A stretch of 64,000 nucleotides of DNA from Podarcis muralis. Lineage: Eukaryota. Position 1 is the stretch's first letter, and each line of letters begins with the position of its first letter. The position numbers and the translations under genes are program-made. The notes below the pieces were generated by a model that was not told where the DNA came from, did not search any database, and worked only from the letters and a program-made list of their open reading frames with translations. Where the stretch lies: positions 25,978,001-26,042,000 of the forward strand of contig NC_135667.1 of NCBI RefSeq assembly GCF_964188315.1, read 5' to 3'. This document shows, piece after piece, positions 3,257 to 58,287 of this stretch.

Positions 3257-4448
3257 CAAGACTTGGAAGTTTTAGGCAAAGAATTTTAGGTTATGGTTGT
3301 AGGAAATCATCGTCAGCAGCAACCAAAGAAATATCACCAGTTTAACCCAATTGTGTTTTTATTCCAGCATCCCTCCAATTCCTTGACTGCTTTGCCTAAG
3401 CAAAAACCTCTAAATTTGAACTGAATTTCACTTTAGATTAAACTTGACAATTCTTACACTAAATATGCAACCTGAATCAGAGAATCAGAGAAAACCCAAC
3501 TGTCCAACATCTAATGATTAGTCAGTTAGTTAAAATAATTCATAAACTACCACCATTCAACACTATTGTGGTAGTTCACAAAAAGGAAAGAAAAACAAAA
3601 TACAAAATGAAATCAATAAGAATATATTCAATCCATCTGTAAAACAGACACAAAAAATATCCAACAATGCAACTGTGAAAAGAAAAACCCTAGTTGATTA
3701 AAAATGTCTTAGGGAGTTTGTTGAAAGAGCAAATTGTTTGTACCGCCCTAATTTCAAGCAGAGAGTGCATTCCAGTGTGTGGGTGCCACCACACTAAAAG
3801 CTCTGCTCTAGGTAAGCATTCAATAAACTTTGAGGGTGTATACTGGGGCACTAGTGAACAGTAAAAAAAAAAAACATGATGCATTAACCCTACAAGAAAT
3901 AGGCTCCAAAGACAAGAACTTTGGAGCAATTCTGACTTCACAAGAGAGCAACACTGACCATTTAGAAAACTAGCAAACGTGGAGACAACTTGAATTGTGC
4001 TTATCTAAAGGAAAAGCAATTGATGAAACCAGTAGAAAATTTGGCAAGATGAACAGTATTGGCGACAAATCTTGGAATGCTGGGTTGCTTTGGTCAGAGT
4101 CCTTGGCATGCAAAACTTGGCATTTCGTGGTACAACTGAAAAGTTGTACTGTGCTAGCAATCAGGATTTTTTGAAGTTTGCAGAATATTTAGCTCCTATT
4201 TCTTCTATCATGAGCACTTGACCTGAATAAATTGGTGACCAAATTTGCAAAGGAAAAGGTATGCAAATGGAGATTTGTCTGAAACTGAAACTTTTAAGCG
4301 ACATAAATTTTAACATCACACTTCACAAGATTATTCAAAATATTTTGTTTGCTAAAAGATTTTATTTTGTATTTGAGAAAGATAATAAAAAAATTGATGT
4401 ATTATTCTTTTTCCTAGATTCAGGTAGGTAGCAGTGTTGGTCTGACGC

Positions 4449-4493
<45 letters not shown>

Positions 4494-4530
4494 CCAGTAG
4501 AACCTTAGAGATGAACTAAGTTTGTTCTTG

Positions 4531-4568
4531 GTATAAGCTTTCGTGTGCATGCACACTTCTTCAGATGC
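4531..4568 (-). ncRNA. Minimal type I hammerhead ribozyme motif (left arm)
   Basis: Minus strand GCAU-CUGAAGA-A-GUGUG CAUG CACAC-GAA-AGCU-U-AUAC; catalytic core intact, one stem I mismatch. Confidence 0.65.
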
Positions 4569-4732
4569 ACTGAAACAGAAGTCGCCAGACCCTTATATAT
4601 AGTGGGAGGGTGGGGTGGGGTTTTTCTCAGGAGGGTAGTGAGTCAATCACCCATCTCCTACTACCCTCCTGAGAAAAAAACCCCACCCCACCCTTCCATT
4701 ATATATAAGGGTCTGGCGACTTCTGTTTCAGT

Positions 4733-4770
4733 GTATCTGAAGAAGTGTACATGCACACGAAAGCTTATAC
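4733..4770 (+). ncRNA. Minimal type I hammerhead ribozyme motif (right arm)
   Basis: GUAU-CUGAAGA-A-GUGUA CAUG CACAC-GAA-AGCU-U-AUAC; stem I GUAU/AUAC perfect, one stem II substitution. Confidence 0.65.
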
Positions 4771-5204
4771 CAAGGACAAACTTAGCTGGTCTCTAAGGTG
4801 CTACTGGACAATTTATTCATTTCTTTTTTTATTTCTTTTTTCTATAAAATATCTGTTTTTAAAAATAGAAGTTAGCAATTTTGGGGCTGGGAGGTGTCTT
4901 GCCTAGGGTGCAAAATAACCCAGCACTGCCACTGCTTACACCAGACTTGAGTTCAGTCAGCTTCCACTCAACCAGCTAGAATGAGCAACTTATGTTGGTG
5001 TATGTTCAGAACAGTTCAGTACTAGCTAAGGCACCAGTTAGCTAGCTAAGCCAGAGATTCCATGTTGGTTATCCCAGTGGTTCTTGCCGTAGGATTTTTC
5101 CCTGGGTAAAAGAGAATATTGAGAGTTCTGATTACAAATATAGATTTTCTTCTGGTTTGGCTTGGCTTATGGGATTTAACACCCCCATAAGGTTTTGTCA
5201 GATT

Positions 5205-6146
5205 TTATCTGTTCATTGAAAAGAGCCTCTTTTTCCCCAGAGTCCTTTTTAGAGCTGCTTTGACATCTTTGTTCCTAAGGCTGTAGATGAGGGGATTTAG
5301 CATTGGAATGACAAGAGTGTAAAACACAGAGACAATTTTGCTTTGAGCTGGGGAGGACATGGCTGCAGGCTGAGCATAAATAAAGAAGACTGTCCCATAA
5401 AAGATGGTCACTGCTGTTATGTGAGAGGCACAGGTAGAAAATGCTTTTCTCCTGCCCTCTACAGATTGAATCTTGAGAATGGTGGAGAGAATGTAAGTGT
5501 AGGAGGTGAATATCACCACTGTGGTGATGGCAATGATAACGTTGCAAAGGGAGAACATCACAGCTTCATTGAGATATGTGTATGTCGTGGCAGCGTTCAT
5601 GACAGCAGGGACATCACAGAAGAAGTGGTTGATTTTGCTGAGGTTGCAGAATCTCAAATGGAAAGAGACACTTGTTTGAATCACTCCGTTTGTACAACCG
5701 CAAGCATAGGAAGTGGCCACCAGACGATGGCAAGACTTCTTGGACATCTTAGTTGGATAGAGGAGTGGGTAGCAAATGGCCACGAAGCGATCGTATGCCA
5801 TGACTGCTAAAAGAAACCCTTCTGTAGTAACAAAGATGGTGAAGAGCATCAACTGGGCCACACAGCCCTCATAAGAGATGATGTTCTTCTCCTCGAAAAA
5901 ATTCACTAGAGCTTTAGGAGCAATTGCGGAGGAATAGCAGAGGTCTAGGAAAGACAAGTTTTTCAGAAAGTAGTACATAGGGGTGTGCAGCTGAGAGTCA
6001 GCACTTATGACAGCAATCATACCACCATTCCCCATCACTGTGGTGATGTACAGCACCAGAAAAGTGATGAAAAATGTTACTTGCAGCTCTGGGAGATCTC
6101 TGAACCCCACCAGGATGAACTCAGAGGCTGTGCTGCAGTTGTCCAT
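5205..6146 (-). CDS. Olfactory receptor, OR9S/OR9K (Olfr12)-like, 313 aa (MDNCST...)
   Basis: [40 protein letters not shown] motifs; N-glycosylation site NCS. The ORF-track start at 6254 lies upstream of a splice acceptor (tttatttcAG, 6156-6157), so ATG 6146 is preferred. Confidence 0.95.
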   Translation of the reverse strand: MDNCSTASEFILVGFRDLPELQVTFFITFLVLYITTVMGNGGMIAVISADSQLHTPMYYFLKNLSFLDLCYSSAIAPKALVNFFEEKNIISYEGCVAQLMLFTIFVTTEGFLLAVMAYDRFVAICYPLLYPTKMSKKSCHRLVATSYACGCTNGVIQTSVSFHLRFCNLSKINHFFCDVPAVMNAATTYTYLNEAVMFSLCNVIIAITTVVIFTSYTYILSTILKIQSVEGRRKAFSTCASHITAVTIFYGTVFFIYAQPAAMSSPAQSKIVSVFYTLVIPMLNPLIYSLRNKDVKAALKRTLGKKRLFSMNR

Positions 6147-7511
6147 GATAGGTTCCTGAAATAAATTAAAACATTTTAATGATACACAGCAAACATCCCT
6201 TGTTAGTTGGCTCCTCAGAAACATTTGGCCAGCCACTGTTAGTAATAAGTTCATAGAATCATTCTGGTGTGGTTGAATTATATTTTCCTTTGTGCTGTCT
6301 ACATTTATTTTTCTCTTTTTGACAATTTAATTTTTATGCCTTCCTTTTACATCAATATTGATATATCTCCATCACTTAGGGAAAGAAAAAGAGAGAAAGA
6401 AAGGGGGGGTTTCTTTTCTCTTTAGAGTTTATCATCGTGCTCTCTAGATGTTGTTGGCTGGAACTGTTGGGAGTTTGGGAAGGGAGTGTCACACAACATA
6501 TGGAAGACACCAGTTTGGCTAGGTCTTAAATTCACTTGTCTCGCCTTAACATATGAAGGGGGGGGGAGATAAGGCTCCAGCTCCCAAAAATGTCTTTCTT
6601 GATCCTTACATCTTCTCTTTCAACTCAGTGGCTAACTACACACACAAATTCCGCTTCAGTGCAGTAACTCATACTAAACATTCCCTTCCCCATCTGCCTC
6701 CACTTTCTTAAAGCAAATTATTTCACCCAGGCTCTTCTACCCAAATACTGAGCCAGCACCATGTTTAATTTATTTCTATGTTAAATTATTTGGGTTGCTA
6801 CAGTTTTATTCCTATAGGCAGCAATCCTATACACAGGCACCTGAAATTAATTTGGGTTGGACCTTATGGGGCTTACTTCTGAGAAGACATGCATAGGATT
6901 GCTCTGTTGGCCATTAGGCATAACCAGAATAAAATGCACGGTACTGCCAACATACCACTTAGTCATTTCTTTGAACCCAGAACATGCTCTATCTCTACAA
7001 CACAAATAATAGCATAATGCTTGGAACGATTAGCATTGAAAGGGTGGAAGAAAATAGGGAATCTTTATAAAGCCGTGGCCATGGTGCTAAAACTGATGTA
7101 AAGATTAGGGGGGGGGGAAGGCTACATTTTTTGCAATAAAATAAAAGACTTCTTGAATTCAGTGAAGCTTGCACCCAGATAAATGGGGTTAGGTTTACAG
7201 TCTGAACTGGAAAAAACAACAGCAGATTTCAGAAAAGCCAAATCTCTGCATCAAACTCGTTAAATAAGTCAGCACCCCACCTGCTTTAGCAGAGTTGTCA
7301 AAATGTGAAATTATAAAACTTACCCAAGAGGTAATGGGGTAGGCAGAAAGTCCAACCCCATCAAGTTGTTCGGCAAGAAAGCCTCAACAGTAGAATTTGA
7401 AAGAATTTATAATAAATGAAGTCTTACAGACCTGAGGGTTAATTTATTCCCCACAGTGTCATAAAGTTAACTGCTTGAGAGCAATTAAATGTACATGGTA
7501 TATGTTGTAGA

Positions 7512-7652
7512 NNNNNNNNNNNNNNNNNNNNNNNNNNNNNNNNNNNNNNNNNNNNNNNNNNNNNNNNNNNNNNNNNNNNNNNNNNNNNNNNNNNNNNNNN
7601 NNNNNNNNNNNNNNNNNNNNNNNNNNNNNNNNNNNNNNNNNNNNNNNNNNNN
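7512..7652. other. Assembly gap (141 N)
   Basis: Run of N. Confidence 1.
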
Positions 7653-7739
7653 ATTATATATGTTTAATGCATCATGTTTGAACAAAATAATTTTTAGTAT
7701 CCCTATTCAGATATTATTGACTTCAGATGTAACATTCTG

Positions 7740-7779
<40 letters not shown>

Positions 7780-8099
7780 TTGTATGTATGTATGTATATA
7801 TATAAGTTAGGTGCCAGATGAAAGACTAAGCCTCAAAGGATACTGTTTTAGGCATATCCAATAAATGCATTGACCTTAGATCTTTCGCTTGTCCCAGATT
7901 TTTAAGACACAATTAAATTGTTGAATTACAGGGCAATCTGAGGAATTCTACTCAGAAGTAAGGCCGTATTAGTTTACTTCCCTCCCTCCCAAAGTAGTTG
8001 TGACTAACATTTTTCGAGCAAATGGGCACATTGCCCTCTGAGAGGCATTCTTCTGTTGGTGCCAAGCAGCAGCCTATGAATAGAAGCAGGCCACAACAG

Positions 8100-8102
8100 C
8101 AT

Positions 8103-8145
<43 letters not shown>

Positions 8146-8147
8146 TA
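8100..8147. repeat. (TATT)n microsatellite; provides AATAAA repeats on the minus strand
   Basis: Direct reading. Confidence 0.9.
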
Positions 8148-8310
8148 TTTTTTGTGTGAGTGTGTTTGCAATAAAAGGGATGGGGAAGGCAAAGGAAAAT
8201 GGTTTTTAGAAAGCTGCTTCTTTAGTTATATGCATATATTGACTTCACTGTGTGTCTAGGTTGGCAAACTTTCTTGAGTGTTGCATTGGATTGGTTTCCT
8301 TGATATAGTT

Positions 8311-8435
8311 ACAGATAGGTAGCCGTGTTGGTCTGCCATAGTCAAAACAAAAAAATATTCCTTCCAGTAGCACCTTAAAGACCAACTAAGTTAGTTCTTG
8401 GTATGAGCTTTCGTGTGCATGCACACTTCTTCAGA
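8311..8435 (-). mobile_element. 5'-truncated Penelope-like element 3' end (125 bp) with 15-bp target-site duplication
   Basis: ttccttgatatagtt at 8296-8310 and 8436-8450 flanks a copy of the 4414-4813 family. Confidence 0.85.
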
Positions 8436-8439
8436 TTCC
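8400..8439 (-). ncRNA. Minimal type I hammerhead ribozyme motif, CUC cleavage triplet
   Basis: Minus strand GGAAU-CUGAAGA-A-GUGUG CAUG CACAC-GAA-AGCU-C-AUACC; 4 of 5 stem I pairs; predicted cut between 8405 and 8404. Confidence 0.7.
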
Positions 8440-8668
8440 TTGATATAGTTGGCATGGATTCATTTGAACTGCTTTCTTGTGTCATGTGCTTTGCATGTAA
8501 TTGGAGCTCTTCTTGTCAAGCAGGAAAAATCCAAATTTTTCTTCAGATTGGTAGTCTTATAATATAGCGGGCCAAACTAGGGGTCCTATACATTCTTACA
8601 TTGGAATAAGTCCCATTGTGCTCAGTCAAAGTTACTTATTGAGTAGACACACAGCTAAAAACTCTGTA

Positions 8669-9601
8669 TCAACAGACAAAGCCTTTTCTTTTGAGTTGCC
8701 TGATCAGAGCCTGTTTGACCTCCTTGTTCCTTAGGCTATAGATGATCGGATTTAACATTGGAATGACAACTGTGTAGAAAACTGACACCACTTTCCCTTG
8801 ATTGGGAGAGGACATGGCCCCAGGTTGGGCATACATAAAGAAAACTGTCCCAAAGAATAAGCTTACTGCCATCAAATGGGAAGTGCAAGTTGAGAAAGCT
8901 TTGTGTCTCCCTTTGCCAGACGGTATGTGCAAGATGGTAGTAACAATGTAAATGTAAGATACTAGGACAATTATGGCTGTGGTCACAATGATGAGACCAC
9001 AGACTACAAGGAGCACCATTTCATTCACAAATGTGTCTGAACAGGAGGCCTTCATGACCGCTGGGACATCACAAAAGAAGTGGTTTACATGAGTTGGGCC
9101 ACAAAATGCCAAACTAAATGTAAACCCAGTTTGGGTGCAGCAGTTGACACAACCAAAGAAGTAAGAGATGCACACAAGGCACATACACCTCTTCTTGGAC
9201 ATAATGGTATGGTAGAGAAGTGGGCTACAGACAGCAATGAATCGGTCATATGCCATCACAGCCAGGAAAAAGGCCTCTGTGGTTCCAAAGAGAGAGAAGA
9301 AGAACATCTGGGTTGCACATCCATTGTAGGAAATGGCCATGTCCCCTGTTGCAAAGCTCACCATGGCTTTGGGAGTGATGACTGAAGAGTAGCAAATATC
9401 CAAGAAGGACAGGTTCTTTAGAAAGTAGTACATAGGAGTATGGAGTTTGGAATCGGAACTGGTGATTAAGATCATACCAGCATTTCCCACCAGAGTGATG
9501 GTGTACATCAGCAAAAAAAGCAATAAGAAAACTATTTGCATTTGTGGCAGACCCTTAAAGCTCACCAATATAAATTCAGTGACCTCAGTATGGTTTCCCA
9601 T
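8669..9601 (-). CDS. Olfactory receptor, OR9S (Olfr12)-like, 310 aa
   Basis: MGNHT, LHTPMYYFL, MAYDRFIAVC, KAFSTCTSH, MYAQPGA...QGKVVSVFYT, PMLNPIIYSLRN; intact frame. Confidence 0.96.
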   Translation of the reverse strand: MGNHTEVTEFILVSFKGLPQMQIVFLLLFLLMYTITLVGNAGMILITSSDSKLHTPMYYFLKNLSFLDICYSSVITPKAMVSFATGDMAISYNGCATQMFFFSLFGTTEAFFLAVMAYDRFIAVCSPLLYHTIMSKKRCMCLVCISYFFGCVNCCTQTGFTFSLAFCGPTHVNHFFCDVPAVMKASCSDTFVNEMVLLVVCGLIIVTTAIIVLVSYIYIVTTILHIPSGKGRHKAFSTCTSHLMAVSLFFGTVFFMYAQPGAMSSPNQGKVVSVFYTVVIPMLNPIIYSLRNKEVKQALIRQLKRKGFVC

Positions 9602-9839
9602 AGCTTAGTTATGACAAGGTGGAAAGTCAGGGGAAAATGTCTTCAAATATCCTTGTATTTGTATTTGCAAACTTCAGAAATGAGAGCTTGAGTATGCAAT
9701 CCTTACAGTGTGGATGCCAAAGGCATAGGAGCATTCTACTGCTACTTTGCATCAGAAATATAGCTGCTTTGTAAAATTATAGTAGCAGAAACCTGAATGG
9801 GAATACAAAGGAAGAGAGGGAGAGAGAGAGATTACACAA

Positions 9840-11288: not shown

Positions 11289-11651
11289 CTAGATTTAGGT
11301 TGGTAGCCATGTTGGTCTGAAGCAGTCGAAATAAATTAAAGAATTGTCTAGTAGCACCTTAGAGACCAACTACGGTAAGTTTGTTCTGGGTATAAGCTTT
11401 TATGTGCATACTATCCCTTGCAAAATTGTAGGACTAATTGCAGTCGTTAGCAGTCGTCAACAGGTTTACCATACCCATTGAGTCAATCACCCATCTCATA
11501 CTACCCTTCTGAGGAAAAACCCACTCCACCCTCCCACTATATATAAGGGTCTGGTGACTTCTGTTTCAGTGTATCTGAAGAAGTGTGCATGCACACGAAA
11601 GCTTATACCCAGAACAAACTTTGTTGGTCTCTAAGGTGCTACTGGACAATT
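11289..11651. mobile_element. Penelope-like element 3' region, second head-to-head fold-back (left arm to about 11411, right arm to 11651)
   Basis: ttgtctagtagcaccttagagacc...aagtttgttctgggtataagcttt is the reverse complement of aaagcttatacccagaacaaactt...ggtctctaaggtgctactggacaa; same family as 4414-4813. Confidence 0.8.
11571..11608 (+). ncRNA. Minimal type I hammerhead ribozyme motif (best-preserved copy)
   Basis: GUAU-CUGAAGA-A-GUGUG CAUG CACAC-GAA-AGCU-U-AUAC: stems I and II perfect, palindromic AGCU stem III. Confidence 0.75.
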
Positions 11652-35160: not shown

Positions 35161-35471
35161 TTCCCACCATTCCTCAACTGCAGCCCCCTGAATCCACTTC
35201 CAAAAGCAGGTTTAAATGCCCTCTTAGCCTGTGGAACCACATTTTGGGAAGTGGATGCAGATGTGGAGGGAAAGAGCAGAAGTACGTTCAACTTTTGCCA
35301 CTGTATTTGTTGTGAGGTATGTCATCACAATGTGGTTTGTCCTGTTCTTTCATGTATTCTGCCTTGTATTTTTAATACATTAAAATGATGTGTTGTTTTG
35401 CTAGCATAATCACCATCCACATCTTAGCATGCTTTTGTTTACTCATTGTTCTTCAGGTCATTAGATCAGGC

Positions 35472-36431
35472 ATGAAGCTGGAAAACCAGACCAGAGTCCA
35501 GGAGTTTATTCTCCTTGGTTTCCCTACTGCCATAGAATTTCAAATACTGCTCTTTGTAATATTCCTTGTTATTTACATCCTGACCCTCCTCGAGAACATT
35601 GTGATCATCACTCTGATCAGGACAAACAGCCATCTCCAAAAACCTATGTACTTTTTCCTTAGCCACCTGTCTTTCCTGGAGACCTGGTACATTTCTGTGA
35701 CTGTTCCCAAGCTCCTGGTTAACTTCCTAGCAAAGAACAAAAGCATTTCCTTTGAAGGCTGCATGGCCCAGCTCTACTTTTTCATATCCCTAGTCTGCAC
35801 TGAGTGTGTCCTCTTGGCTGTCATGGCTTATGATCGCTACATCGCCATCTGCAACCCACTGCGCTACCCAGTCATTATGAATTCCCGGCTCTGTTTGCAG
35901 TTAGCTGTGGGATCTTGGCTTGCTGGTTTCCTAATCTCAATGCTGAAAGTCTTCTTCATTTCCCGCTTGAGTTTCTGTGGACCCAACATCATCAACCATT
36001 TCTTCTGTGACATCTCACCTCTGCTGAACCTCTCCTGCACGGACAGAACTGTAGCTGAGATGGTGGACTTTGTATTTGCCCTCCTTATCCTTATAATCCC
36101 ACTGTCTGTCACTATTGGTTCCTATGTGTGCATAATAGGCACCATTTTGCGTATCCCCACAGCCAAGGGGAAAAGAAAAGCCTTTTCCACCTGTGCCTCA
36201 CACCTCACTGTGGTTATTATTTTCTACTCAGCCACTCTCTTCATGTATGCCCGACCAAGAAGAATCCATTCTTTTAATCTCAATAAGCTTGTGTCCATTG
36301 TATACACTATTGTCACCCCGATGTTGAATCCATGCATTTACTGCCTCAGGAATCAAGATGTGAAGGAAGCCATGAAAAAGATATTTTGTAGCAGGAATGC
36401 TGAAACCACGGTTACCACCAGTGACCATTAG
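35472..36431 (+). CDS. OR6B1: Olfactory receptor, OR6B1-like, 319 aa (MKLENQT...)
   Basis: [10 protein letters not shown]-terminus, [48 protein letters not shown]; acceptor gttcttcAG at 35455-35456 lies between the ORF-track start and ATG 35472. Confidence 0.93.
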
Positions 36432-37091
36432 ACTCACACCAGACAGAAAAGAATCCCTTATATTCTCAAATATAAGAAATGACTCACAAATACAGATCAG
36501 ACCCTTTGATCCTCCTCTTTATGATAATCTCTCTAATGTGAACACTTGCTCACAGTGATTCAAAATGCTGCATGGCCAGAAGCACGTTATCCAATTCATA
36601 CACTAGTAAATTTGGGTTGGAGTTAGAGGGCTGATGAAAATGTGCACAGGGAAATAGTGATTGCTGTCAAAGAATGAACAAAAATGTGGAAGCACACAAT
36701 TTTATATGGAATTCGTCTTTGACACTGACTACTTAACTCAGTTTTGAAATGATTTTTTTAAATAAAAAAATCTCCTTTTTCTCTCTTACCATAATTGGGA
36801 ACAAGACAGAAAATGTACATTTTAAAGCAAATTCAACTTAACATATTATGCTTGCACATTTTCTTTCTGTTTCTAATTTTCTTTAAATTAAGTTTTTAAT
36901 TGTCCAGAGTTTGAAACATAGTTTTATGAATGTTTTACACTGCTACTATTGTCTGCTATATAGAATGCTCTTTTAATTTTAATTTTGTTATATATATATA
37001 TATATATATGCTTTCGTAGATTTTCACGGGTATAGGTATGCAGGTTTTGGTGTCCTCGGGTGTCTTCCCGTGTAAAAGTTGGGGTGTCTAG

Positions 37092-37129
37092 GCGACGTTT
37101 CGACGAGGTCTCACTCGTCATCTTCAGGC
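37092..37129 (-). ncRNA. Minimal hammerhead motif, mirror copy of 38647-38684
   Basis: Reverse complement of the right-arm motif. Confidence 0.55.
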
Positions 37130-37534: not shown

Positions 37535-38040
37535 TCATGGTTTGGCTACTGGATGGTGTCTGTAATTTATCTGTGGAGAGGGTCTGGGTTTGGGTCTGGT
37601 GTGGTTGATTGGTGATGCGTTCTGTGTGCCTCTGGATCTGGTGTCAGTTTTTGTGGGGAGGGCTAATTTCCAGATGTCTGGCAAGCGGGATGTGTCGTCA
37701 CGCTTGTTCATGTTGTGAGGGTGTTTCTCTATCTCGATGGCTTCCATGATTATTCTCTTGTGGTGATGTTCCATGTTAGAGAGCAATTTGGAATCTGCAA
37801 AATTAATTTCGTGTCCTGTTTCTTTCATGTGTTGGAAAAGAGAGGAAGTTTTTTCTTCTTTTTTGACGGCATTCTTGTGTTCTGCGATACGTGCATTTAT
37901 TCGTCTGTTTGTTTGTCCAATGTACGTGGCTGGGCAGACTTTGCAGGGTATTTCATAGACCCCTTGGTTTTCCAACTGGATTTCATCCTTGGGGTTTCTG
38001 AGGATATTGGCTATCTTTTGGTTGGCGCAAAAGGCTGTTT
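37535..38040 (-). pseudogene. GIY-YIG endonuclease C-terminal fragment of the Penelope ORF
   Basis: Frame open from the junction: TAFCANQKIANILRNPKDEIQLENQGVYEIPCKVCPATYIGQTNRRINARIAEH...; RT domain absent. Confidence 0.88.
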
Positions 38041-38646
38041 TGATAGAGAAACACCCTCACAACATGAACAAGCGTGACGACACATCCCGCTTGCCAGACA
38101 TCTGGAAATTAGCCCTCCCCACAAAAACTGACACCAGATCCAGAGGCACACAGAACGCCATCACCAATCAACCACACCAGACCCAAACCCAGACCCTCTC
38201 CACAGATAAATTACAGACACCATCCAGTAGCCAAACCATGATGGCACCTCCGGATGCTGCACCCCCCTGCAATCCCTACACAGATCTGGCTGGCACAGGC
38301 CACAAAACCACAGCTCGCCCCTATACACGAAGCCAAGCCAGAGCACAACTACAGCCATCTTCTCAGAAAAACTCTTCACAAAGTTCAAGAGGTCAAGACA
38401 CAAAGGCTTTAGCAACTAATCCACACCTAATGACCCACCTAAGTGGTACTCAGGATATCACTCAAGAAATCACTCAAGATATCCCTCAAGCAACTAAGGA
38501 ACAAAAGAAGAAAAGGCACACTAGCCTGGGAACTTCCTCTCGGCCCAGAACATTGGAGGCTATACACCACACCCCTCAACAGTATTTATAGGAACTCAAA
38601 CACTGAGATCCTGCTCTGTTCCAGTAACAAGAAGCCGAAAGCACCA

Positions 38647-38684
38647 GCCTGAAGATGACGAGTGAGACCTCGTCGAAACGTCGC
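38647..38684 (+). ncRNA. Minimal type I hammerhead motif (second Penelope family), GUC triplet
   Basis: GC-CUGAAGA-U-GACGAG UGAGAC CUCGUC-GAA-ACGU-C-GC; 6-bp stem II, palindromic ACGU stem III, stem I only 2 bp. Confidence 0.55.
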
Positions 38685-39689
38685 CTAGACACCCCAACTT
38701 TTACACGGGAAGACACCCGAGGACACCAAAACCTGCATATATATATATATATATATATAGTTTTGTTTGTTAGTTGCCCTGGACTCACTTTGGGTAGGAA
38801 GGGCAGGTTATACACTTGAAATAATTGTGGTGGTGGCAGTGGTAGTGATAATATAGTCTATATGTATGGAATAACAAATTTTAATCTGATATGTGACAAT
38901 TTCAAGTTTAATTCTGAAATTATGCTGGATAATCACTAATAATATTCACTAATGTTAAAATGTGTATATTAAAAGGGGAAGGAAAATAAGAAATTTCAAT
39001 TTATAAATATCATTCATTTGGTTGTTTTCCTTGAAGTAATGTATCATTGTTTTCAAATGTTAAGTGTAGAAATATGCTTCAATGAGTTCATTTGATGACA
39101 CTTAATTTCCAAATCTGAAATGATGGTGTGTGTTTTAAAAAAAGTTTTAAAGTGCTTTAGTATTTGTCATTAATATTCATCTGTTTTTAGCCTTCTGTAT
39201 TTTACTGTGCTGTTTTCATATGTATAAGCCATATTGAGTCCTAGACTGGGAAAAGGTGAGATGATGATAGTTTTCTTTTAAAACATTTTTTTTTTAACAA
39301 TTACAAATATAAAAAAGCTTATCTAGCAGTACATCTAATGGTGTTTTTTCTATTCACACATATAACACGTGGAGTCTAATTTAAGAAAATGGGGGGAAAT
39401 GGTCCAGAGTTGTCCAGAGGTTTTTGGGGGAAGGCTTGCCTGGAGTTGTTGAGCTTTTTTTGGGGGGGGGGGTGATGCCGAAAATCACTAAACGCAGGCT
39501 GCTGCCAATTGATCACGTCAACGAACTGCAGCAACAGCCAATCCACTACAGCCTTTGCTGAAGCAACCAATCACCCACTCAATTAGCATAGCAGCTGCCA
39601 ATCCAAAGCAGCCCTTGAAGCAGCCACCAATCGCCCACCAAATTGCCGCTGACAAGTTCCTGCTCGCGGCTACAAGCAGTCACCCATCC

Positions 39690-58110: not shown

Positions 58111-58287
58111 NNNNNNNNNNNNNNNNNNNNNNNNNNNNNNNNNNNNNNNNNNNNNNNNNNNNNNNNNNNNNNNNNNNNNNNNNNNNNNNNNNNNNNNNNN
58201 NNNNNNNNNNNNNNNNNNNNNNNNNNNNNNNNNNNNNNNNNNNNNNNNNNNNNNNNNNNNNNNNNNNNNNNNNNNNNNNNNNNNNNN
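58111..58287. other. Assembly gap (177 N)
   Basis: Run of N. Confidence 1.

What the first reader, a model, noticed from the sequence alone, without database searches (positions are those of the whole stretch)
8296..8668. Sense-strand hammerhead ribozyme in the predicted 3' UTR of an olfactory receptor
Seen: a 125-bp Penelope-type insert with a 15-bp TSD lies 234 bp past the stop codon of the OR at 8669-9601, on the same strand. It has an intact CUGAAGA...GAAA core, a perfect stem II and a CUC triplet. The insert starts 1 nt before the core, and flanking host sequence (GGAAU) restores 4 of 5 stem I pairs with AUACC. I found no AATAAA or ATTAAA on the minus strand between the stop codon and the (TATT)n at 8100-8147, so the motif should be inside the mRNA. 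Established: minimal hammerheads of Penelope-like elements cleave weakly as monomers and better as dimers through the palindromic stem III. Inference: cleavage would separate the OR coding region from its poly(A) tail, a transposon-derived way of tuning receptor mRNA.
Basis: partly seen in the sequence, partly recalled or inferred. Interest (0 to 1): 0.72.

Follow-up and report, generated by a model that had tools for sequence, protein, structure and literature searches.

The report
Penelope hammerhead fragment behind smell-receptor gene
A 125-base end piece of a very abundant lizard jumping gene, carrying that element's small hammerhead ribozyme motif, landed just downstream of an intact smell-receptor gene; the motif is real, but the evidence suggests it does not cut or tune the receptor's mRNA, so the finding is ordinary.

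Summary
A 125-bp insert (8311-8435, minus strand) with a perfect 15-bp target-site duplication lies 233 nt past the stop codon of an intact olfactory receptor ORF (8669-9601, minus). It carries a complete minimal hammerhead motif. No AATAAA or ATTAAA occurs before the (AAAT)n tract at 8147-8100.

The insert is a 5'-truncated leader/ORF-start fragment of a Poseidon-type Penelope-like element (PLE). An AUG lies in loop II, and the 3' end falls at +110 of that frame, close to the internal reverse-transcription start published for the Anolis element. The family is very abundant: three loci in this 64 kb, and roughly 10^4-10^5-fold DNA word depth.

The functional reading is not supported:
- The motif is solitary.
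- Its 5' stem I strand is replaced by host bases, which give no net stability.
- Stem III can form only between two molecules (4 bp, millimolar Kd).
- Published PLE hammerheads are inactive as monomers, or need the PLE protein.
- Hundreds of RNA reads from sister copies cross the cleavage site uncut.
- No RNA read covers this OR, so its 3' end is unmapped.

This scan has noted such hammerheads on other DNA of this genome (119 notes).

Verdict: an ordinary, probably inert transposon passenger in a likely 3' UTR.

The parts
8669..9601 (-). Intact single-exon olfactory receptor ORF (310 aa, stop TGA at 8671-8669)
   Evidence: Translation without stops. Pfam 7tm_4 E = 6.5e-49 and 7tm_1 E = 2.1e-38. 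One of eight OR-sized ORFs in the window.
8436..8450 (-). Upstream copy of the 15-bp target-site duplication; its last bases GGAA (8439-8436) take the place of the element's own 5' strand of stem I
   Evidence: Exact 15-mer present only twice in the window, 0.01 expected; sequence.
8311..8435 (-). 5'-truncated fragment of a Poseidon-type Penelope-like element, running from hammerhead position 2.1 to +110 of the element's ORF
   Evidence: 92-93% identical over its first 73 nt to three other copies in the window. AUG at 8420-8418; sister copies keep the same frame open, while this copy has TAA at codon 10. The 3' end lies in an AC-rich stretch, close to the RT start at +111-118 published for Anolis PAc.
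8400..8435 (-). Minimal type-I hammerhead motif (min-HHR): U2.1, CUGAAGA, bulged A, stem II, GAAA, AGCU palindrome, C17, AUACC
   Evidence: Read directly. Exact or near-exact copies at 4530-4564(-), 4737-4771(+) and 11575-11609(+). Fits the published min-HHR features. No Rfam hammerhead hit even at E <= 10.
8404..8405 (-). Predicted scissile bond (after C17 = 8405)
   Evidence: Position follows from the motif numbering. No excess of read ends here in three RNA runs, and hundreds of family reads cross it.
8296..8310 (-). Downstream copy of the 15-bp target-site duplication
8100..8147 (-). (AAAT)n microsatellite holding the first canonical AATAAA signals after the OR stop (first at 8143, 526 nt after the stop); the likely but unproven poly(A) region
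   Evidence: Hexamer scan; sequence, including a GU-rich stretch just downstream.

Best explanation
This is one ordinary, fairly recent insertion of a very abundant lizard Penelope-like retroelement of the Poseidon type.

How it arose (inferred): the element's reverse transcriptase started copying at its usual internal site, about 110 nt into the element's ORF. It stopped or was truncated just as it entered the hammerhead. That left a 125-bp fragment flanked by a 15-bp target-site duplication, 233 nt downstream of an intact olfactory receptor ORF and on the same strand.

What it carries: the family's minimal hammerhead, which in the parent element sits at the pLTR/ORF junction. According to the literature, that hammerhead works only as a dimer in tandem transcripts or with help from the element's protein.

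State of this copy: the motif is solitary, has lost its own 5' stem I strand, and lacks the downstream RNA needed to bind the element's protein. It is therefore most likely a catalytically inert passenger. It probably lies inside the receptor's 3' UTR (inferred, not shown) and has no ribozyme-based effect on the mRNA.
For: Shown:
- Perfect 15-bp TSD and a 125-bp insert.
- Three loci of the same family and one locus of a second min-HHR family in 64 kb.
- Summed DNA word depth over the insert of about 7-9.5 x 10^5, against about 12-17 in the flanks, in another individual's run. The tool warns this is not a copy number, so I read it only as very abundant.
- AUG in loop II with a frame shared by sister copies, and a 3' end at +110 in an AC-rich stretch. 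This is close to the internal RT initiation at +111-118 in Anolis PAc.

For inertness:
- Single S. mansoni min-HHRs showed no detectable self-cleavage, and dimers only low activity.
- The PAc HHR showed no cleavage without PLE protein. The protein needs the first 172 nt of the ORF. No RNA-seq ends were found at its cut site.
- Here, 98, 343 and 223 reads of X21, X23 and X24 carry the family's upstream sequence beyond 8436. By read length they extend about 80-90 nt into the insert, so they cross 8405/8404. No place of excess read starts or ends is reported.
- The host-restored stem I is net unfavourable: -4.6 kcal/mol with it against -5.5 for stem II alone. It disappears from the MFE in 175-nt and 271-nt contexts.
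- The 4-bp AGCU stem III duplex has a computed Kd of about 2-17 mM.
- At least 3 of 4 host bases pairing has a 5-9% chance expectation.
Against: - The catalytic core is fully intact, with a favourable CUC triplet.
- The isolated 45-81-nt RNA does fold into the hammerhead secondary structure as its MFE.
- Efficient 3'-UTR hammerheads that lower expression exist (Clec2).
- Standard RNA-seq cannot exclude low-level cleavage.
- The tissues of the RNA runs are unknown, and none shows this OR, so nothing was measured on the OR transcript itself.
- No full-length element of this family, with its RT and GIY-YIG domains, was available to me. The Penelope assignment rests on motif architecture, layout and the literature.
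Confidence: 0.85

Rival explanations
1. The hammerhead cleaves the OR mRNA between the coding region and the poly(A) tail, either as a monomer using the host-restored stem I or as a dimer. It thereby lowers or tunes receptor expression.
For: - The core, stem II and CUC triplet are intact.
- 4 of 5 stem I pairs are restored by host bases.
- The hammerhead fold is the MFE of the isolated 45-81-nt RNA.
- The motif lies before the first canonical poly(A) signal.
- There is a precedent for a 3'-UTR hammerhead cutting expression by 80% (Clec2).
Against: - Single min-HHRs are inactive in vitro, and dimers are weak even at non-physiological Mg2+.
- The squamate Poseidon HHR needs PLE protein, whose binding region (to +172) is missing here.
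- There is no same-strand partner within the plausible transcript. The nearest is 3.9 kb away, beyond the next OR gene, and is locked in a fold-back.
- Trans-dimerisation through AGCU has a millimolar Kd. The far more stable dimer goes through the stem II palindrome, which is not the catalytic arrangement.
- Sister-copy RNAs cross the site uncut.
- The family's density makes the location unremarkable.
Confidence: 0.05
2. The insert is not part of the mature OR mRNA at all. Polyadenylation uses a non-canonical site within the first ~230 nt after the stop, so the motif is simply intergenic.
For: - Variant hexamers lie upstream of the insert: AATAAG at 8640, AAGAAA at 8543 and 8478, and AATGAA at 8464.
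- In mouse, about 30% of Olfr 3' ends lack a canonical signal, and very short isoforms (92-114 nt) exist.
Against: - There is no canonical signal before 8143.
- Neighbouring ORs have their first canonical signal 330-1947 nt after the stop.
- Mouse Olfr proximal UTR medians are 0.6-0.8 kb.
Confidence: 0.27
3. The insert affects the OR mRNA by generic transposon-in-UTR routes rather than by catalysis. Examples are its U-rich tract, or pairing with abundant antisense family transcripts that leads to dsRNA or small-RNA targeting.
For: - Family reads map in both orientations at similar depth in all three RNA runs.
- The insert contains a U-rich run.
- Mouse Olfr 3' UTRs are reported to carry regulatory AU-rich features.
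Against: - The libraries may be unstranded, so reads in both orientations do not prove antisense RNA.
- There are no data from olfactory tissue.
- No small-RNA data were examined.
- The effect would not be specific to this locus.
Confidence: 0.08

Closest known systems
Minimal hammerheads of Penelope-like elements (min-HHR; Cervera & De la Pena 2014, PMC4209133)
   Same: Same conserved core, an unpaired base between A9 and G10.1, a G10.1-C11.1 pair, a long helix II, no real helix III but a palindromic 15.2-16.2 (AGCU), and a short helix I. Most copies are scattered as single motifs from truncated elements. Reptiles were already reported to carry them.
   Different: In this copy only one or two bases of the 5' strand of helix I belong to the element; host bases supply the rest. 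It lies downstream of an OR ORF.
Poseidon PLE of Anolis carolinensis (PAc; Frangieh et al. 2024, PMC11167929)
   Same: Squamate host. The hammerhead overlaps the ORF start. Insertions end at an internal RT start in an AC-rich stretch about 110-118 nt into the ORF. 5' truncation is tolerated. The target is AT-rich (the TSD here is 73% A+T).
   Different: [quoted passage not shown] Here the AUG is in loop II and the cut is 16 nt from its A. No RT or endonuclease part of this family was seen in the window.
Discontinuous hammerhead in the 3' UTR of rodent Clec2 genes (Martick et al. 2008, as summarised in PMC2950038)
   Same: A hammerhead on the sense strand, between the stop codon and the poly(A) site of a receptor-type gene.
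   Different: The Clec2 ribozyme is a full hammerhead with all three helices. It is conserved across mammals and was shown to cut reporter expression by 80% in a core-dependent way. The motif here has no helix III, shows no conservation beyond its repeat family, and has no activity data.
Non-LTR retrozyme / PLE-derived hammerhead monomers in Xenopus (Li, Clavereau & Pollet 2026 preprint)
   Same: PLE-derived hammerhead-bearing repeats dispersed as monomers. The few that overlap exons are mostly in last exons or 3' UTRs.
   Different: Those are retrozyme units defined by tandem repeats. This is a single truncated PLE end.
OR4K15 twister-sister-like ribozyme of humans (PMC11620745)
   Same: A self-cleaving RNA motif physically associated with an olfactory receptor gene.
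   Different: [quoted passage not shown] It is unrelated in origin.

Membership tests
PLE minimal hammerhead (min-HHR) | Conserved core boxes C3 U4 G5 A6 N7 G8 A9 and G12 A13 A14 | tested here: met
   CUGAAGA at 8434-8428 and GAA at 8412-8410.
PLE minimal hammerhead (min-HHR) | [quoted passage not shown] | tested here: met
   Extra A at 8427; G8426 pairs with C8413. Feature list.
PLE minimal hammerhead (min-HHR) | Long helix II (6-8 bp) | tested here: met
   GUGUG/CACAC with loop CAUG, extendable to a 7-bp palindrome.
PLE minimal hammerhead (min-HHR) | No stable helix III; palindromic 15.2-16.2 that allows a dimeric helix III; H at position 17 | tested here: met
   A15.1 G C U16.1 is AGCU (8409-8406), and C17 is 8405.
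PLE minimal hammerhead (min-HHR) | Helix I of 4-5 bp formed by the element's own sequence | tested here: not met
   Sister copies have GUAU/AUAC. The loose-end consensus at 8436 agrees. This copy keeps only U2.1, possibly also A2.2. Host GGAA gives 2+2 pairs around an A.A mismatch, with no net stability.
PLE minimal hammerhead (min-HHR) | Self-cleavage at the predicted site | not testable with these tools
   There is only indirect evidence: no excess of read ends at 8405/8404, and many family reads cross it.
Rfam hammerhead families (Hammerhead_1, _3, _II, HH9, HH10) | Match to a curated covariance model | tested here: not met
   No hammerhead hit at E <= 10 in either 4 kb or 101 nt. This is expected for a motif without helix III.
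Penelope-like element insertion (Poseidon type) | Hammerhead at the pLTR/ORF junction with the ORF start inside it | tested here: met
   AUG at 8420-8418 in loop II. The shared open frame MHTKAYTK.KLSWSLRCYWT is present in three sister copies; this copy has a stop at codon 10. Compare.
Penelope-like element insertion (Poseidon type) | 3' end at the internal RT start about 111-118 nt into the ORF, in an AC-rich stem-loop | tested here: met
   The insert ends at +110, within ...CAGACCAACACGGCUACC.... Published value.
Penelope-like element insertion (Poseidon type) | Target-site duplication and an AT-rich target | tested here: met
   15-bp perfect TSD with 73% A+T, against 59% for the window.
Penelope-like element insertion (Poseidon type) | Family encodes a telomerase-like RT plus a GIY-YIG endonuclease | not testable with these tools
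   No coding part of this family lies in the window. The two 200-aa ORFs near the other PLE fold-back have no Pfam hit. The lizard genome is not searchable here.
Functional 3'-UTR hammerhead (Clec2 type) | Lies within the mature mRNA upstream of the poly(A) site | tested here: inconclusive
   No canonical signal before 8143, but there are no reads on this OR in three RNA runs.
Functional 3'-UTR hammerhead (Clec2 type) | Complete three-helix ribozyme that is active as a single molecule | tested here: not met
   A15.1-U16.1 would close a 2-nt loop, so helix III cannot form within one molecule. Published single min-HHRs are inactive.
Functional 3'-UTR hammerhead (Clec2 type) | Conservation at the orthologous locus across species | not tested
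   No related genome is available. One contig from a second individual bridges the 5' junction with only 26 nt inside the insert.

The most novel reading that the evidence does not exclude
In olfactory neurons the solitary min-HHR in this OR 3' UTR is nevertheless cleaved at a low rate. Help would come from abundant same-family transcripts, a chaperone or PLE protein. Penelope fragments scattered in sense orientation through OR 3' UTRs would then contribute to differences in receptor mRNA level between genes and between individuals.
Probability: 0.04. Interest if true: 0.6.

Novelty: new member of a known kind. Interest (0 to 1): 0.12.

Why it matters
If the motif did cleave, it would be a second natural case, after Clec2, of a hammerhead controlling an animal mRNA from its 3' UTR, and the first derived from a transposon in a chemoreceptor family.

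As the evidence stands, the value is mostly practical. In this lizard genome, intact-looking hammerhead cores are carried by tens of thousands of Penelope fragments. A core next to a gene is therefore the expected background and not a signal.

The copy also illustrates the published internal-initiation model for PLE integration: its 3' end lies at +110 of the ORF.

Tried and rejected
- Rfam scans (4 kb and 101 nt, E <= 10) gave no hammerhead hit. I take this as a limit of the curated models, which expect helix III, and not as evidence against the motif.
- RNA evidence for the OR: the single run search found no RNA holder. Three raw-read RNA runs of the species gave zero depth on the CDS and on the unique flanks. 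The poly(A) site and any cleavage of this transcript therefore remain unmeasured. The tissues are unknown.
- Insertion polymorphism: no empty-site joint was seen in the DNA run of another individual. One 68-nt contig crosses the 5' junction with only 26 nt inside the insert, below the tool's 31-nt criterion. Presence in a second individual is therefore only suggested.
- The two long joints from 8436 and 8440 to about 9805-9813 land in a GA-rich low-complexity stretch. I rejected them as spurious.
- A cis partner for dimerisation: the nearest same-strand copy (4530-4564) is 3.9 kb away, beyond the next OR gene, and is sequestered in a fold-back. Rejected.
- Dimer folding: the cofold MFE pairs the stem II palindromes (-17 kcal/mol net) and not stem III. 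This is not the catalytic arrangement.
- Lunse, Weinberg & Breaker 2017 could not be read because it is not held. I relied on its summary in a review.
- The search of earlier notes by sequence was blank.
- The costly protein searches were not used. Pfam sufficed to identify the OR.

Full report
**Observation**

On the minus strand, the 15-mer AACTATATCAAGGAA occurs exactly twice in the 64-kb window, at 8436-8450 and 8296-8310. Shuffles give 0.01 expected matches. The two copies bracket 125 bp, at 8311-8435.

The insert opens with U, then CUGAAGA (8434-8428). It continues with:
- an extra A (8427);
- stem II GUGUG-CAUG-CACAC (8426-8413);
- GAA (8412-8410);
- the palindrome AGCU (8409-8406);
- C17 (8405);
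- AUACC (8404-8400).

The upstream ORF at 8669-9601 (minus) is an intact 310-aa olfactory receptor. Pfam 7tm_4 matches with E = 6.5e-49. It sits in a cluster of eight OR-sized ORFs. There is no AATAAA or ATTAAA between the stop and 8143, where an (AAAT)n tract supplies a run of them.

**What the insert is**

The same hammerhead, with 1-2 mismatches, occurs at 4530-4564(-), 4737-4771(+) and 11575-11609(+). The first 73 nt of the insert are 92-93% identical to those copies.

The other loci are head-to-head fold-back pairs, at 4420-4812 and 11297-11650. This layout is described for Penelope-like elements. In those copies the sequence before the core is ...CAGUGUAU, so the family's own stem I is GUAU/AUAC. 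The loose-end consensus of hundreds of RNA reads beyond 8436 says the same. The copy at 8311-8435 is therefore 5'-truncated at hammerhead position 2.1, or 2.2 given the 1-nt ambiguity at 8436.

An AUG sits in loop II (8420-8418). Three sister copies share an open frame from it, MHTKAYTK.KLSWSLRCYWT. This copy has a TAA at codon 10. The insert ends at +110 from that AUG, in an AC-rich stretch.

Frangieh et al. 2024 showed several things for the Anolis Poseidon element:
- the ORF start lies in the hammerhead;
- reverse transcription starts internally, in an AC-rich stem-loop 111-118 nt into the ORF;
- 5' truncation is tolerated;
- targets are AT-rich.

Here the TSD is 73% A+T. The insert is thus a standard short product of a Poseidon-type PLE. 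I could not link the family to an RT/GIY-YIG ORF, because no coding part is in the window and the lizard genome is not searchable with these tools. Earlier notes of this scan name the host as a wall lizard.

**Abundance**

A relaxed hammerhead descriptor hits six loci in the window, against 0.24 expected. All lie in PLE repeats of two families.

In a DNA run of another individual, the summed word depth over the insert is about 7-9.5 x 10^5, against about 12-17 in the flanks. The tool warns that this is not a copy number, so I read it only as very abundant.

At about one same-family locus per 20 kb, the chance that a given 500-nt downstream flank holds a sense copy is of the order of 1-2%. Cases among hundreds of ORs are therefore expected. 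A second sense copy lies 641 nt downstream of the neighbouring OR at 5205-6254. The scan's own notes hold 119 entries on Penelope hammerheads in this genome, including other probable 3' UTRs. I treat those as leads only.

**Is it a hammerhead?**

It meets the features that Cervera & De la Pena (2014) list for PLE min-HHRs:
- the core boxes;
- a base between 9 and 10.1;
- a G10.1-C11.1 pair;
- a long helix II;
- a palindromic 15.2-16.2.

It fails the Rfam models even at E <= 10, as expected for a motif without helix III. The one family feature it does not meet is a helix I made of its own sequence.

**Is it in the mRNA?**

This is plausible but unproven. The first canonical signal is 526 nt after the stop. 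The seven neighbouring ORs have theirs at 330-1947 nt. Mouse Olfr proximal 3' UTRs have medians of 0.6-0.8 kb.

Against that, about 30% of mouse Olfr 3' ends lack a canonical hexamer, and very short isoforms exist. Variant hexamers also lie upstream of the insert.

Three raw-read RNA runs of the species gave no read on the CDS or on the unique flanks. All reads on 8296-8436 run on into unlike sequence (97-99%), so they come from other copies. I put the motif inside the mature mRNA at about 0.7.

**Does it cut?**

The evidence points to no.

1. Architecture. A15.1-U16.1 would close a 2-nt loop, so helix III can form only between two molecules. The AGCU duplex has a computed Kd of 2-17 mM. The much more stable dimer uses the stem II palindrome (-17 kcal/mol net), which is not the catalytic form. 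The nearest same-strand partner is 3.9 kb away, beyond the next gene, and is locked in a fold-back.

2. Stem I. The host-restored helix is net unfavourable (-4.6 against -5.5 kcal/mol). It vanishes from the MFE in 175-nt and 271-nt contexts, although it is present in 45-81-nt pieces. Getting at least 3 of 4 pairs from random host bases has a 5-9% chance.

3. Literature. Single min-HHRs show no detectable cleavage, and dimers only low activity (review). The Anolis Poseidon hammerhead did not cleave without PLE protein. That protein needs the first 172 nt of the ORF, and this copy stops at +110. No RNA-seq ends were found at its cut site.

4. Reads here. 98, 343 and 223 reads in the three RNA runs carry family sequence upstream of 8436. 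By read length they extend about 80-90 nt into the insert, so they cross 8405/8404. No place of excess starts or ends is reported.

Standard RNA-seq cannot exclude weak cleavage, and nothing was measured on the OR transcript itself.

**Comparison and verdict**

The Clec2 3'-UTR hammerhead reduces reporter expression by 80% in a core-dependent way. That ribozyme, however, is a complete three-helix ribozyme conserved across mammals. PLE-derived hammerhead monomers in 3' UTRs have also been noted in Xenopus.

This locus is one more scattered, truncated PLE end of a known kind. I give 0.85 to an inert transposon passenger, about 0.05 to ribozyme-based tuning, and score the interest low.

The N runs at 7512-7652 and 58111-58287 were left untouched.

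Noticed in passing
window 4420-4812: Head-to-head fold-back pair of the same PLE family, with hammerheads at 4530-4564(-) and 4737-4771(+). The minus-strand one is sense to the neighbouring OR (5205-6254, minus) and 641 nt past its stop. AATAAA signals at 4833 and 4817 precede it, so it is probably beyond that gene's proximal poly(A) site. A (CA)n tract has expanded inside the left arm.
   Followed up: partly
window 11297-11650: Second fold-back of the same family. The right arm is intact, with a hammerhead at 11575-11609(+). The left arm is degraded (76-83% identity) and has lost its hammerhead core.
   Followed up: partly
window 37089-37127(-) and 38649-38687(+): A different min-HHR family: CUGAAGA, a bulged U, a 6-bp stem II, GAAA, an ACGU palindrome and C17. 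The two copies sit on opposite strands about 1.5 kb apart, downstream of the OR at 35385-36431. The 200-aa ORF between them (37989-38591) has no Pfam hit.
   Followed up: partly
window 8418-8420 and sister copies 4751, 11589, 4550: The AUG in loop II of the hammerhead opens a frame shared by the sister copies (MHTKAYTK.KLSWSLRCYWT). This fits the published layout in which the PLE ORF starts inside the hammerhead. In the copy behind the OR, the frame stops at codon 10.
   Followed up: partly
window 7737-7818: A (CA)n/(TA)n microsatellite produces sub-threshold matches to several miRNA models (mir-3149, mir-1277, mir-297). These are low-complexity artefacts.
   Followed up: no
window 9805-9830: A GA-rich low-complexity stretch upstream of the OR start attracts extra DNA depth and two spurious long joints in the read layout.
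   Followed up: yes
window 7512-7652 and 58111-58287: Two runs of N (141 and 177 bases). The first lies about 1.0-1.15 kb downstream of the OR stop on the minus strand.
   Followed up: no
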